32,000 nucleotides of DNA from the NCBI GenBank assembly GCA_054661495.1, contig BAAFSQ010000071.1, positions 1 through 32,000 on the forward strand. The letters are read 5' to 3'. The first letter of the stretch is position 1, and every line of letters starts with the position of its first letter. Below the pieces are notes generated by a model that was not told the origin of the DNA, did not search any database, and saw only the letters and a program-made list of their open reading frames with translations. The stretch comes from Zygophlyctis sp. KS116 (lineage: Eukaryota; Fungi; Chytridiomycota). Of this stretch, positions 24,799-29,168 are shown piece after piece. The position numbers and the translations under genes were made by a program.

Positions 24799-26582
24799 TC
24801 ACTTTCTACCATTGATCCAGTAAGTCGTCATTGTACCTTTTCCCTACAAAATTAATAAATAGTAATTACCTTGATTTGCATCACATCAGGCTCACTGCAG
24901 TTAATGTTTGTATTCTTGATCAAGTTATATGTAGTTTCAGAAATATGGATCATCATGGGTTTTGATGAGGACTCCATACGTGATGCAGTGTTCACTGTAT
25001 CTCCGACAATGCACCAGTGAGGATTTAACTCACCCAGAACTCCTGCAGTAATTGGTCCAGAGTTTAGACCAATACGAATCTGAATAGCATCGCCCATAGC
25101 AGTTTTAAAGGTTTTTATCATTTCGATGATATCAATGGAAAAATTTACTGCACGGAAAGCATGATCGGCTGCTTTTTCAGGACAACCGGTCACAGCTAAA
25201 TACGCATCACCAATTGTTTCGACTTTGTATACTCCCCATTTCCTTGCAATGGCATCGTATTCAATCCACAATTTGTTTAGTGTACTCAACATATCTTTAG
25301 TAGATGTCTTTCCAGAAAGTACAGTAAAGTTTGCAATGTCAGAAAAGAATACAGTAACGTTTTCATATTCTTGAGCCTCGGTAGATTTTCCAGATTTGAT
25401 TTGTTGGATTACTCTAAAAAATTATAAAATAAAATTACTCTTGAGGCATCATTCTCTCCAAAAGTTTTTCGGTATTTCCCATTTCAGTTTCCAAATCTTG
25501 GGCAATACCAGACAATAAATCGACTTTTTGATTCTGAGCTTCATCAACCGAAGCATTTATCAAAATCAGGGTCAAAAAGACCTTTGCAACAATGTCAATG
25601 CCTACATAAAGTGCTTCACCTTGACCAAAAGTAATATAGTTATATCTAACAAGACCATATACAACAGGGACTTCAAAATTATTTAAGGAAAACTTACAAC
25701 AGTTCCATGCAAACATGCAAGCTAGTCTTGAAAGTTTTAATGCTGTTTTATCCAAATTACAAGCAGTCTTTCCTTCAATTGCATCAGTAAACATATCATA
25801 GAGTCCAGTAACGACAATGCAATGCGATCCGCAAGAAATGATCAAGCAAATTTCAGACCATGGTTGCTTGAGGATCGAGGCAAGAAAGCCAGTGATGACA
25901 AGAATGTAATCATGAGTCATGGTTCGCTTTACTATCGAAGTATTTCGTGTTACATTTCCAATGAGAGCTATCAAAGATGGGCAGCAAGTTAACCATTCTA
26001 TAAATCGGCCGACATCCACAGGATATCCATTTGAATCCTTCAATGATGGAGATAGTCTCAGAAAATGTAGTACATATGTACTGGTGGCCACAATATCCAC
26101 CAAAAGCAAAACCATCGCTAATCCTTTCTTCTCAGCAGTTTTTGCCGAGTTGTATCCCAAAATGGCGAATCCTATCCCGATAATAAAGGCCGAAATGGCA
26201 CATAAATAACCATAATCGGAAATTCCTCGATCAAACTTTGTTTGATATGAATATTTTGACAATGCAAATGTAGCCAGACCCACAGTTGCCAAAAACCAGT
26301 AGGCGGTTGCGCCCTTTTGATAGCGTGCAAGAGCATTACTCTTTCTACTGCTCTGTTTAGTAGCTTGATCTACTTTATCTCTCCAATTGAGCTTTTTCTT
26401 TGTATTAGCTGTCTGAACTTCATCTAGAATCAGTAATGATTAAAATTACCATAGTTTTCCTCTCTGTGTTTATTTGCTTTACATCCGCAATCCTCACATT
26501 TAAAAGATCCCTTTACAATAGAAAACTCAGTACAATCACAAGCATTGCAAGCACCTCTCATCACCTCATTCATGTCCTTCAT
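24799..26582 (-). CDS. Rhodopsin-guanylyl cyclase A (type Ib 8-TM enzymerhodopsin, CyclOp/RGC family) with N-terminal Cys-rich module
   Basis: Exons 26582-26450, 26423-25698, 25670-25439, 25413-24870 and 24843-24799. TM3 RFIEWLTCCP; TM6 WNCFPVVY; TM7 IDIVAKVF (retinal Lys); linker ending LLERMMP; cyclase FFSDIANFT, KVETIGDAY, PHWCIVGDTVNTASRMES, IKGKGTMTTYW. Confidence 0.96.
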
Positions 26583-26718
26583 ATTTTTTAATGTAAACAA
26601 ACAACAATGGATTGACGGTAGGCGCCACTATGACGCACGATTACTGAAATAGATACCACATGTCTGGGTCTAGAATTACTCATGTCTTCATAAAAAATTA
26701 TTTTCATGTAATGCATAT

Positions 26719-28490
26719 TTATGAATATTCTCTACCGTAAATCCAGTAAGTGTTCATAGTCCCTTTCCCCTTGATCTCCATGGTATCTTGATCAGACAAA
26801 ATAAATCCACTGTCTTTGATAAGTTCATATGTTGTTTCTGATATATGTATATTCATTGCCTTGGAAGTTGATTCCATCCGTGAAGCTGTATTTACTGTAT
26901 CTCCTACAATGCACCAATGAGGATTCAATTCACCTAAAATACCAGCCGTAATGGGTCCAGAATTTAAGCCAATTCGAATTTGAAGGGATTCTCCCGCGGT
27001 TGTTCTGAATTTTTTCACCATGTGAATAATATCTATTATGATTAAGCAGTCGATTCTTACCAAGAGCAAAATTAGCCGCTCTAGCAGCATGGTCAGTCGA
27101 TCTTAGAGGACACCCCGTAACAGCCAAGTATGCATCTCCAATAGTCTCAACCTTGTATACACCCCATTTTTTTGCAATGGCATCGTATTCAATCCAAAGC
27201 TTATTTAAGTTAATGAGCATTTCTTTATTCTGATTATCAGTCAAGATATAAAAATACCGATAATTTTCCTGCCAGAACTGTATAGTTTGCTATATCAGAG
27301 AAGAATACTGTAACCGATTCGAATTCTTGAGCGGTGGCACTTTCACCAGATATGATTTGACTAATGACACTAAAGTTTATAAAAGAAAATTACTCTTCGG
27401 GCATCATTCGACCTAAAAGCGTCTCAGTTTTATCTAAATCTTGAGACATTTCTTCAGCGATTCCAACCAAAACTTCAACTTTGTTGTTTTGTAGCTCTTC
27501 AACAGACGCATTTATAAGTAACATTGTAACAAAAACTTTAGACACAATATCCGCCATAGCAAACAGAAGCTCTCCAATTGGAAAACTAACAAGCTTAAAT
27601 CTAACTGAAAAGAAAATGACTGGAAAGCTGGTCCAAGATAACACAGTTACTCCTCTAGTCACCAGCAATGATAAACGGTCCAGTTTGCACATTGTTCTAC
27701 CATAAATCGCATGATTAAACATCTTAAATAACCCAGATATAACATAAAAGTATGCACCAACAGCTACTGCTAATGAAATATAAGAATAGGGAGAGCGCAA
27801 AATAGCACCTAGGAACCCAGCTGAAAGTAAGATATAATCAATAGCAACTGTTTTCTTTCCATGAGTTATATCTCTTGTTAAGACTGAAATAAGAGAAATA
27901 TATGTTGGACATGTTGCATTCCATTCAAAGAATCTGGCAAAATCTACAGGATACCCATTAACATCCCTTAGACTAGGAGTTAACCGGAAATATTTTAAGA
28001 GATGACTTAGCATTGCAATCATGTTTACAATGATTAGTATTTCACTCAGTTTCTTTCGATCATCCTTGGAGGAGAGGTATCCCATTGTAGCAAAGAATAT
28101 ACCCATGAAAAACACCGAGGATGCATACAAATAGACACCATCACTTATTCCTCTTCCAATCTTTTCTGGACGATTTTGAAAAGAAGTATATGCCCAAATA
28201 CTTGATGTAATCAGCCATATCATTGCAATCCTCCTTTGTGAAGCCAATAAGGCTGCCGTTCGCTGGTTTTCCATGATCTTTACAGAGTTAACTTTTTCCA
28301 TATATCCCTTCTTATTGCTATTTTTCCTACCCAACAATGGCATTTGACTCTCATCCTTTGACGCAATCAGGTTCTTATGTTTTGCAGATTTACATCCGCA
28401 ATCAGAGCATCGATGAGTACCATCAAATGTAAACTCTACACAGGTGCAAGACATACAAGCACCTCTCATGACTTCCCTCTTATCTTTCAT
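26719..28490 (-). CDS. Rhodopsin-guanylyl cyclase B (type Ib 8-TM enzymerhodopsin) with N-terminal Cys-rich module
   Basis: Exons 28490-27394, 27369-27258, 27229-27061 and 27032-26719. TM3 RFFEWNATCP; TM6 WTSFPVIF; TM7 ADIVSKVF; linker ending LLGRMMP; cyclase FFSDIANYT, KVETIGDAY, PHWCIVGDTVNTASRMES, IKGKGTMNTYW. Start placed by alignment with paralog A (MKDxxEVMRGAC). Confidence 0.96.
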
Positions 28491-28706
28491 TCCGAGCCAA
28501 CCGTAAACAAAGGGGTGGAAATCGGACACGGAAAGAATTGACACTTTTTATATGAGTACTCTCCAACATATGATGATCAGTATTATAAATATTTAATTAT
28601 AAGTGATACAGATGGAGTTAATATGAAATATATATTGCAGATCTTAAATCAGCTGCAACGATCATAAGAACCAAACGCCACCACGCCGCCTTATCTTATC
28701 TTCTAA

Positions 28707-29168
28707 ATGTCTGCGAAATCATCAACCGGACAGAACAAGGCTTCATGCAAGAGGTCATTCTCTTCCTTTAAAAGTGAGAATACTGAAGATGTTTTTCATG
28801 ATGATAATGTCTTTGGGTTTATGGATGATAGTGATAATTGTCGGTCAAATCTCAAATCAATTGACGATTTTCCTGTTCATGATCTAACAGAAAACCCAAC
28901 GTATCTGATGGAATTTGGATTCTGTAATGGATTTTTATGGAATGAAGAAGTTTTATTGGTAATATCTAGATTTTAATCATAGTCCCCTCCATTTTCAAAC
29001 TCTACGTCTTCGTCGTACTATTCATCCCAAATATCTAGTAACTCTAATCACATAATGCATTCTTCTTCATATCCAAATAGCAAAGCCTTTCCATCATTGT
29101 TGGCAGAAAAGTTGCGTAAAAAAAGGATATCACAAGAAACAAAAGTTGCAGAAATTAGAATTGATTAA
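28707..29168 (+). CDS. Small hypothetical protein (two exons), divergent from RGC-B
   Basis: 89-aa ORF, then a short GT-AG intron near 28959-28982 leading to an in-frame exon ending LLAEKLRKKRISQETKVAEIRID*. No family recognised. Confidence 0.45.

What the first reader, a model, noticed from the sequence alone, without database searches (positions are those of the whole stretch)
28377..28490. Same Cys6-His module at the N-terminus of RGC-B
Seen: MKDKREVMRGACMSCTCVEFTFDGTHRCSDCGCKSAKH lies in one uninterrupted frame with the rhodopsin domain, so the fusion does not depend on any splice prediction. All six Cys and the terminal His match paralog A, and B has an additional His in the loop. Seven conserved potential ligands could form a binuclear site or an inter-subunit site in a dimer (inference).
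Basis: partly seen in the sequence, partly recalled or inferred. Interest (0 to 1): 0.8.

Follow-up and report, generated by a model that had tools for sequence, protein, structure and literature searches.

The report
Conserved zinc module heading light-sensor enzyme
The first 38 residues of this fungal light-activated guanylyl cyclase are a real, conserved seven-ligand cysteine/histidine module, probably holding two zinc ions. The same module also heads the well-known optogenetic cyclases, where it is dispensable for light control, and it occurs in unrelated animal proteins.

Summary
Window 28490-28377 (-) encodes MKDKREVMRGACMSCTCVEFTFDGTHRCSDCGCKSAKH in the same open frame as the rhodopsin domain of RGC-B, and 28490 is the first in-frame ATG after a stop.

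The module is not special to this gene:
- All four rhodopsin-cyclase genes of this genome start with it.
- So do BeGC1 and CaRGC, the model enzymes. Published deletion of CaRGC residues 1-43 removes exactly this module and leaves the photocycle and activity intact.
- An exhaustive profile search found 66 cluster representatives, nearly all with the module at residue 1. They include non-rhodopsin proteins of bivalves, a sponge and amphioxus.

Across 76 copies, five Cys, the final His and an aromatic residue never change; the sixth ligand is Cys or His. No Pfam family covers the module.

An AlphaFold model (pLDDT 81) has one solved-structure match: the binuclear Zn2Cys5His2 region of GCN5 PCAF_N, which has the same seven-ligand order. 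Its best predicted-structure match is the plant ZF-HD dimerisation finger. Both links are weak and neither family's HMM matches.

My reading is a cytosolic two-zinc accessory module for docking or pairing, not part of the light-to-cyclase relay. RGC-B's extra loop His is not conserved.

The scan's follow-up on paralogue RGC-A in this same window (s1-564351) reached the same core conclusion. The animal relatives and the binuclear analogy are new here.

The parts
28377..28490 (-). N-terminal Cys6-His module of RGC-B, residues 1-38. Ligand candidates are C12, C15, C17, C28, C31, C33 and H38. Other conserved residues are D3, R9, G10, E19 and F20.
28488..28490 (-). Start codon: the first in-frame ATG. 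It opens the conserved M-K-D start of the family.
   Evidence: family alignment
28548..28550 (-). In-frame TAA upstream of the start, so no N-terminal extension is possible without an intron.
   Evidence: Read; ORF limits
28236..28376 (-). Cytosolic linker, residues 39-85. It is less conserved than the module. It holds the alternative Met codons M50 (MPLLG) and M64 (MEKV).
28179..28235 (-). Approximate extra transmembrane helix TM0 (RIAMIWLITSSIWAYTSF), ahead of the seven-helix rhodopsin.
   Evidence: Sequence, by analogy with TM0 of BeCyclOp (PMC4569695); not predicted with a tool
27394..28490 (-). Exon 1 of RGC-B: module, linker, TM0, rhodopsin and the start of the coiled coil.
   Evidence: splice junction MMPE|DVISQ agrees with the intronless orthologue P0002
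27370..27393 (-). Intron 1, 24 nt (GT..AG).
26719..27369 (-). Cyclase exons 2-4 (27369-27258, 27229-27061, 27032-26719 including the stop), separated by 28-nt introns at 27257-27230 and 27060-27033. The predicted protein has 563 aa.
26466..26582 (-). The same module at the start of paralogue RGC-A. It is encoded by a separate first exon, followed by a 26-nt phase-1 intron at 26449-26424.

Best explanation
Residues 1-38 of RGC-B form a translated, autonomous, cytosolic metal-binding mini-domain. It is tethered by a linker of about 47 residues to TM0 of a rhodopsin-guanylyl cyclase. It has seven ligand positions in a 3+4 arrangement: C-x2-C-x-C-x2-aromatic, then C-x2-C-x-(C/H)-x4-H.

By analogy with the solved Zn2Cys5His2 site of GCN5 PCAF_N, it most likely binds two zinc ions, with the fifth ligand (C31) bridging them (inferred). 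It belongs to an unannotated family. That family heads rhodopsin-cyclases of Chytridiomycota and Blastocladiomycota, and also occurs in non-rhodopsin proteins of animals and unnamed eukaryotes (shown).

It is not part of the core light-to-cyclase relay. Published deletion of the homologous residues in CaRGC keeps, or even raises, activity (shown in the literature for the homologue).

The most likely role is an accessory protein-protein handle: pairing or clustering of protomers, or docking the receptor to a partner in the zoospore. A mild autoinhibitory effect is possible (inferred).
For: - Sequence and frame.
- Four paralogues in this genome, and only in rhodopsin-cyclase genes.
- BeGC1 (P0079) and CaRGC (P0078, P0083) begin with the same module, residues 1-39.
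- Allomyces, Chytridium and Entophlyctis proteins carry the module, with Pfam rhodopsin matches in all three and cyclase matches in the first two.
- 66 cluster representatives at E<=1e-3, mostly with the module at residue 1. They include proteins of bivalves, a sponge and amphioxus.
- In 76 copies C12, C15, C17, C28, C31 and H38 are invariant. Position 33 is Cys in 52 and His in 24, a swap typical of metal ligands. Position 20 is always F or Y.
- AF2 model with pLDDT 81.
- Its only VIA match with Z>=2 among 48,161 chains is the GCN5 PCAF_N Zn region (7by1_B residues 96-154; Z 2.6, rmsd 2.5 A, 37 aligned, 27% identity).
- That region is a binuclear site with ligands C107, C113, C115, C142, C145 (bridging), H147 and H151, plus Trp118: PMC8586995.
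- The best ESM Atlas match is a plant ZF-HD_dimer cluster (TM 0.71, rmsd 1.6 A over 35 residues).
- The ZF-HD consensus ends in C-x2-C-x-C-H-x3-H: PMC9369202.
- CaRGC lacking residues 1-43 keeps its photocycle, and its activity 'rather increases'. An N-terminal YFP tag is tolerated: PMC8575461, PMC5967339.
Against: - No metal-binding data exist.
- The Pfam HMMs for PCAF_N and ZF-HD_dimer do not match. PF06466 gives nothing at E<=10. PF04770 scores only E 0.23-0.96, about 10 bits against a cut-off of 27.
- The 7by1 match is weak (Z 2.6) and depends on the model. The shallower model (pLDDT 71) matched only generic zinc ribbons.
- I could not see the residue-by-residue superposition or the model coordinates.
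- The last spacing differs: x4 here against x3 in PCAF_N.
- The proposed docking or pairing role has no direct evidence. The truncation data show only that the module is not needed in heterologous cells.
- No RNA reads could be obtained for this genome.
Confidence: 0.6

Rival explanations
1. The module is a mononuclear Cys4 zinc ribbon, with C12 and C15 as one knuckle and C28 and C31 as the other. C17, C33 and H38 would then be structural, or would complete a second site only across two protomers of the dimeric enzyme.
For: The shallow AF2 model and Foldseek give weak zinc-ribbon or NZF-like neighbours such as TFS4, Rpb9, TFIIS, eL42 and Rpb12. Some members give weak Pfam Zn_ribbon hits, with RRN7 at 2.7e-4 and RPAB4 at 2.6e-3. 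RGCs are obligate dimers.
Against: C17 and H38 are invariant, and position 33 is only ever Cys or His, in 76 copies. These include monomer-looking soluble animal proteins and tandem arrays. The better model fits no zinc ribbon at Z>=2. The solved PCAF_N site uses all seven ligands within one chain.
Confidence: 0.2
2. The module binds a redox-active or soft metal, as a rubredoxin-like iron site, an Fe-S cluster or a Cu(I)-thiolate cluster. It would act as a redox or metal sensor modulating the photoreceptor.
For: C-x2-C-G knuckles also occur in rubredoxins. There are weak sub-threshold Pfam hits to FtrD-like iron-sulfur proteins (6 members, best E 0.0035), Fer4_6 and metallothionein. Removing the module slightly raises CaRGC activity (PMC8575461).
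Against: All these hits are below the family cut-offs. The spacing does not match classical Fe-S motifs. The closest structural analogues are zinc sites.
Confidence: 0.1
3. The cysteines are lipidation (S-palmitoylation) sites that pin the N-terminus to the membrane, not metal ligands.
For: It is a cysteine cluster on the cytosolic side of a membrane protein.
Against: The same module occurs in proteins without membrane segments and in tandem arrays. It has an invariant His and a Cys/His swap, and it is predicted to fold compactly.
Confidence: 0.04
4. The module is not part of the mature protein, because translation starts at M50 or M64, or the N-terminus is cleaved off.
For: No RNA or protein data exist for this genome. 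Some automatic gene models of orthologues start downstream (P0004, P0005).
Against: Conservation in the module is higher than in the linker. The M-[KR]-D start is conserved in dozens of proteins. An orthologue's transcript-like contig covers the module. Gao et al. [quoted passage not shown]
Confidence: 0.05

Closest known systems
N-terminus of the fungal rhodopsin-guanylyl cyclases BeGC1/BeCyclOp (Blastocladiella emersonii) and CaRGC/CaRhGC (Catenaria anguillulae)
   Same: Same position (residue 1), same seven ligands, same MKDK..RGAC start, and the same downstream architecture of TM0, rhodopsin, coiled coil and class III cyclase.
   Different: The cytosolic N-terminus is shorter here, about 85 residues against 146 in BeCyclOp (PMC4569695). 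RGC-B has an extra loop His. None of the papers I could search describes the module as a domain or as metal-binding. They treat residues 1-43 as a dispensable stretch.
[quoted passage not shown]
   Same: Seven ligands in the same order and of the same type, with an aromatic residue two positions after the third Cys. Some family members share the C-x4/5-C-x-C variant. It is the only solved-structure neighbour of the better model.
   Different: There is no HMM match to PF06466. The loop between the two halves is about 10 residues here against 26. The last spacing is x4 against x3. The aromatic residue is F or Y, not W. The sixth ligand is Cys in fungal RGCs. There is no helical connector and no MSL3-like domain. 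E3-ligase activity is unknown here.
Plant ZF-HD / MIF Cys/His-rich dimerisation finger (Pfam PF04770)
   Same: It is N-terminal, and its second half C-x2-C-x-C-(H)-x3-H has the same C-x2-C-x-C-x4-H spacing. It is preceded by a Cys in the C-x-E-F context. It is the best predicted-structure neighbour (TM 0.71, rmsd 1.6 A over 35 residues).
   Different: The first half is C-x3-H-x11-C rather than C-x2-C-x-C. Sequence scores are far below the Pfam cut-off. It is plant-specific and attached to homeodomains. Dimerisation is untested here.
Classical zinc ribbons (TFIIS, Rpb9, Rpb12, eL42, NZF)
   Same: Two C-x2-C knuckles on short beta hairpins, with weak sequence and fold hits.
   Different: Zinc ribbons have four ligands and one metal. 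Here three further ligand positions are invariant, and the better model does not fit zinc ribbons at Z>=2.

Membership tests
Fungal rhodopsin-guanylyl cyclase (RGC/CyclOp) N-terminal module | Sits at residue 1 of a protein with TM0, a type I rhodopsin and a class III cyclase | tested here: met
   Rhodopsin matches at E 1.2e-19. The cyclase exons are colinear with P0002, which carries PF00211.
Fungal rhodopsin-guanylyl cyclase (RGC/CyclOp) N-terminal module | All seven Cys/His positions align with BeGC1 and CaRGC | tested here: met
   (alignment A2).
PCAF_N Zn region (Pfam PF06466) | Seven ligands in the order C, C, C, C, C, H, H, with an aromatic residue two positions after the third | tested here: met
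   Pattern, compared with the ligand list in PMC8586995. The sixth ligand is Cys in RGCs and His in 24 of 76 family members.
PCAF_N Zn region (Pfam PF06466) | Match to the family HMM | tested here: not met
   No match in the six-frame own genome at E<=10. PCAF_N is not among the families hit by the 76 members.
PCAF_N Zn region (Pfam PF06466) | Structural superposition on 7BY1 | tested here: inconclusive
   Z 2.6, rmsd 2.5 A over 37 residues, and the only hit with Z>=2. It was not recovered with the shallower model, and the residue register could not be inspected.
PCAF_N Zn region (Pfam PF06466) | Followed by a coiled-coil connector and an MSL3-like helical domain | tested here: not met
   Here the module is followed by a linker and a rhodopsin.
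PCAF_N Zn region (Pfam PF06466) | Binds two zinc ions with one bridging Cys | not testable with these tools
   Needs metal analysis or a structure.
ZF-HD dimerisation finger (Pfam PF04770) | Consensus CX3HX11CX12-26CX2CXCHX3H | tested here: inconclusive
   The second half and the C-x-E-F context match; the first half differs.
ZF-HD dimerisation finger (Pfam PF04770) | Match to the family HMM above the gathering score | tested here: not met
   E 0.96 and 10.3 bits against a cut-off of 27 for RGC-A. Two of 76 members match, best E 0.23.
ZF-HD dimerisation finger (Pfam PF04770) | Same fold (predicted models) | tested here: met
   The top ESM Atlas row is a cluster that is 100% PF04770, with TM 0.71 and rmsd 1.6 A over 35 residues. 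Both sides are predicted models.
Zinc ribbon (Cys4) | Exactly four ligands in two knuckles | tested here: not met
   Seven invariant or near-invariant ligand positions.

The most novel reading that the evidence does not exclude
The module defines an undescribed, ancient eukaryotic family of binuclear-zinc fingers, related to the plant ZF-HD dimerisation finger and the metazoan PCAF_N Zn region. In zoospore photoreceptors it would decide which protomers pair, where the receptor is anchored (eyespot), or how fast it is turned over by recruiting ubiquitin-conjugating enzymes. Optogenetic constructs lacking residues 1-43 cannot show any such in vivo control.
Probability: 0.3. Interest if true: 0.7.

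Novelty: new variant of a known kind. Interest (0 to 1): 0.5.

Why it matters
Rhodopsin-guanylyl cyclases are the phototaxis receptors of zoosporic fungi and are widely used optogenetic tools. How their cytosolic N-terminus works is an open question. This work makes three points.
- The extreme N-terminus is a discrete, strongly conserved, probably two-zinc domain, not a disordered tail.
- It is older and more widespread than the photoreceptor, since animals carry it on unrelated proteins.
- A solved analogue gives a concrete, testable metal-site model.

It also suggests that constructs lacking residues 1-43 may be missing an in vivo control such as pairing, anchoring or turnover. For this particular gene, however, the module is simply the family's normal N-terminus.

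Tried and rejected
- Pfam on the module alone found no family.
- PDB sequence searches with both profiles and with two variant members gave only chance-level zinc-ribbon-like hits and never 7BY1.
- The PCAF_N HMM against the own genome found nothing, and nothing rang in the tool's control genomes either. That negative is therefore weak.
- The word-index protein searches with RGC-B exon 1 and with P0002 reached only six close relatives. The third search, seeded with the Allomyces protein, was needed to fetch BeGC1 and CaRGC.
- The ESM Atlas feature search gave nothing informative.
- Foldseek against PDB gave only E>2 hits, and a VIA second look at them found none with Z>=2.
- Literature searches for any mention of zinc or a cysteine-rich N-terminus in RGCs found none. 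The primary paper on 7BY1 (PMC7586209) is not held, so the ligand list comes from the authors' review.
- Cluster look-ups gave no names for most non-RGC members.
Exon 1 was used by reference, and the natural intronless orthologue P0002 stood in for the full length.

Full report
**Observation.**
On the minus strand, window 28490-28377 reads ATG AAA GAT AAG ... AAA CAT.
- It lies in ORF 27390..28544 (-), which continues without interruption into the rhodopsin domain. Pfam Bac_rhodopsin matches residues 125-329 at E 1.2e-19.
- An in-frame TAA at 28550-28548 lies 60 nt upstream, and 28490 is the first in-frame ATG after it. No longer N-terminus is possible without an intron.
- By comparison with the intronless orthologue P0002, the gene has four exons: 28490-27394, 27369-27258, 27229-27061 and 27032-26719. 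The mini-introns are 24, 28 and 28 nt, and the protein has 563 aa.
- I did not search any joined spliced model. Exon 1 was used by reference, and P0002, a natural stored protein, served where a full-length query was needed.

**Paralogues and orthologues.**
- RGC-A (ATG at 26582) carries the same module on a separate first exon, followed by a 26-nt phase-1 intron.
- The whole genome (12.7 Mb) holds four copies: the two here, one on contig C43 and one on C38. Each lies directly 5' of a rhodopsin-type ORF. A 76-sequence family profile finds no further copy, so in this organism the module is confined to rhodopsin-cyclase genes.
- Three metagenomic orthologues of RGC-B keep every ligand once their truncated gene models are extended upstream.
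- Within this clade the module is 66-74% identical. The linker is 49-61% identical and the rhodopsin core 59-68%. The module is therefore under at least as much constraint as the photoreceptor core.

**Is it translated?**
- Indirect evidence comes from P0002, which is 68% identical to RGC-B. It is encoded without introns on four contigs of about 1.8-1.9 kb from different samples. P0005 is identical to it over 88% of the queried part (residues 1-345) but ends by reading into intron-like sequence after MMPEE. These contigs therefore look like spliced transcripts.
- The longest contig, L009, extends 153 nt upstream of MKDGREVLRGAC and has an in-frame stop upstream.
- The start M-[KR]-D is conserved at residue 1 in dozens of family members.
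- Gao et al. [quoted passage not shown]
- A downstream start at M50 or M64 is therefore unlikely.

**The module in the model enzymes.**
A search seeded with the Allomyces protein retrieved BeGC1 (P0079), a synthetic-construct RGC (P0078) whose first 50 residues are identical to those of the genomic Catenaria anguillulae protein (P0083), and that genomic protein itself.
- All three begin MKDKDNNLRGACS(S/G)C(N/S)CPEYC(F/Y)SPTSTLCDDCKCSVTKHPIV. That is the same module in residues 1-39.
- Fischer et al. (PMC8575461) used CaRGC lacking residues 1-43 for most of their biophysics. They report no change in light-induced behaviour. [quoted passage not shown]
- An N-terminal YFP tag leaves CaRhGC activity unchanged (PMC5967339).
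- Deleting residues 1-90 of BeCyclOp raises dark activity (PMC4569695).
- So the module itself is not needed for light-to-cyclase coupling in heterologous cells. The region between it and TM0 is.
- None of the papers I could search calls the module a domain or mentions metal binding.

**A wider family.**
A profile of seven modules, searched exhaustively against 1.84 billion representatives, gave 66 proteins at E<=1e-3. Almost all have the match starting at residue 1.
- Ten are demonstrably RGC-like beyond the module. They include proteins of Allomyces arbusculus, Chytridium lagenaria and Entophlyctis helioformis.
- Others are not photoreceptors:
  - two freshwater-mussel proteins with 6 and 9 tandem copies;
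  - a sponge protein (Oopsacas minuta, P0013) with 2 copies, and two unnamed proteins (P0022, P0069) with the same two-copy layout;
  - an amphioxus protein;
  - a fusion to a short-chain dehydrogenase;
  - many unnamed small eukaryotic proteins in which the module is followed by an acidic stretch and a second Cys/His motif.
- In 76 aligned copies C12, C15, C17, C28, C31 and H38 are invariant. D3 and R9 are present in 75 of 76. Position 20 is always F or Y. Position 33 is Cys in 52 and His in 24. A Cys/His swap at an otherwise fixed position is the classical signature of a metal ligand.
- RGC-B's extra His (H26) falls in a column that is mostly hydrophobic or Asn, so it is not a family ligand.
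- No Pfam family covers the module.

**Fold and metal site.**
- With the 76-sequence alignment, AlphaFold2 gives a compact model with mean pLDDT 81.4. A 7-sequence alignment gave pLDDT 71.
- An all-against-all structural search of 48,161 PDB representatives returned a single chain with Z>=2. It is 7by1_B, the PCAF_N domain of mouse GCN5, residues 96-154 against model residues 4-40 (Z 2.6, rmsd 2.5 A, 37 aligned, 27% identity).
- The authors' review (PMC8586995) describes exactly this stretch as a binuclear Zn2Cys5His2 'Zn region' that sequence analysis had not predicted.
  - Its ligands are Cys107, Cys113, Cys115, Cys142, Cys145 (which bridges both ions), His147 and His151.
  - It has a conserved Trp118 two residues after the third Cys.
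- The patterns compare as follows.
  - PCAF_N: C-x5-C-x-C-x2-W ... C-x2-C-x-H-x3-H.
  - Module: C-x2-C-x-C-x2-[FY] ... C-x2-C-x-[CH]-x4-H.
  - Some family members have C-x4/5-C-x-C.
- The best predicted-structure neighbour in the ESM Atlas is a cluster of plant ZF-HD dimerisation fingers (TM 0.71, rmsd 1.6 A over 35 residues). Their published consensus CX3HX11CX12-26CX2CXCHX3H (PMC9369202) shares the second half and the C-x-E-F context. ZF-HD_dimer is also the only Pfam family that scored against RGC-A's module, although at chance level.
- I therefore read the module as a 3+4-ligand two-zinc finger with C31 as the probable bridging ligand.
- The weaknesses are real:
  - Z 2.6 is low.
  - The shallower model matched only generic zinc ribbons.
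  - Neither the PCAF_N nor the ZF-HD HMM recognises the module.
  - I could not inspect coordinates or residue registers.
  - Homology to either family is not established.

**Function.**
- Shown: the module is conserved, N-terminal and cytosolic by topology. [quoted passage not shown] It is dispensable for photoactivation in the homologue.
- Inferred: it is an accessory interaction handle. The two analogues point to self- or hetero-association (ZF-HD fingers, and the RAG1 binuclear cluster mentioned) or to E2 recruitment. Deleting the Zn region abolishes GCN5 auto-ubiquitination.
- For an obligately dimeric receptor that exists as four paralogues here, and that works as heterodimers in some chytrids (PMC10622942; PMC8815786, abstract), partner choice, clustering or anchoring at the eyespot, or turnover are the plausible roles. 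None is tested.

**Verdict.**
- For this gene the module is the normal N-terminus of the RGC family, so on its own it is not a surprise. The scan's follow-up on RGC-A (s1-564351, same window) had already reached that conclusion.
- New here are the spread of the module to animal and other non-photoreceptor proteins, the family-wide ligand statistics, and a concrete two-zinc model from a solved analogue.

Noticed in passing
P0034-P0042, P0047, P0049, P0052, P0057, P0058, P0062, P0064, P0067, P0071 (unnamed ENA, Logan and JGI proteins): These small non-rhodopsin proteins combine the N-terminal module (sixth ligand His in most, Cys in P0052, P0058, P0067 and P0071) with a variable linker, acidic in many, and a second conserved motif, C-x-[FVY]-PGC-x7-8-[FY]D-x-NTG-x5-6-C-x2-H. 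Two of the eight scanned (P0036, P0064) hit Pfam EsV_1_7_cys only below threshold (E 0.005 and 0.014). The source organisms are unknown.
   Followed up: partly
P0007 (Sinanodonta woodiana), P0008 (Potamilus streckersoni), P0013 (Oopsacas minuta), P0022 and P0069 (unnamed), P0060: The module occurs as 6 and 9 tandem repeats in two freshwater-mussel proteins. It occurs twice in the sponge protein P0013 and in two unnamed look-alikes (P0022, P0069). In P0060 it is fused to a short-chain dehydrogenase (adh_short, E 2.3e-17).
   Followed up: partly
window 25671-25697 (-): RGC-A seems to hide an in-frame 27-nt GT..AG mini-intron inside its rhodopsin ORF. Removing it turns ...AWNCCKFSLNNFEVPVV... into ...AWNCFPVV..., which then aligns with RGC-B ...SWTSFPVI....
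   Followed up: partly
L009:1-160: The transcript-like contig of the 68%-identical orthologue has upstream ATGs in its 153-nt leader. One short uORF ends in ATGA, overlapping the main start codon.
   Followed up: no
window 24800-27300 (-): The cyclase domains of both RGC-A and RGC-B keep both metal-binding Asp contexts (FFSDI, ETIGDAY) and the NPHWCIVGDTVNTASRME segment. By eye, neither looks like a catalytically degenerate heterodimer-only subunit.
   Followed up: no
window 28491-28706: Only about 216 nt separate the RGC-B start from a divergent ORF on the plus strand (28707-28976). A TATAAAAA-like element lies about 55 nt upstream of the ATG, and no ATG lies between it and 28490.
   Followed up: no
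L003 (G000:C43) and L004 (G000:C38): These are two further rhodopsin-type genes with the module. The C43 copy has a much longer, hydrophobic N-terminal region between module and rhodopsin. The C38 copy has SHIFAK instead of the D-x3-K context in helix 7.
   Followed up: no
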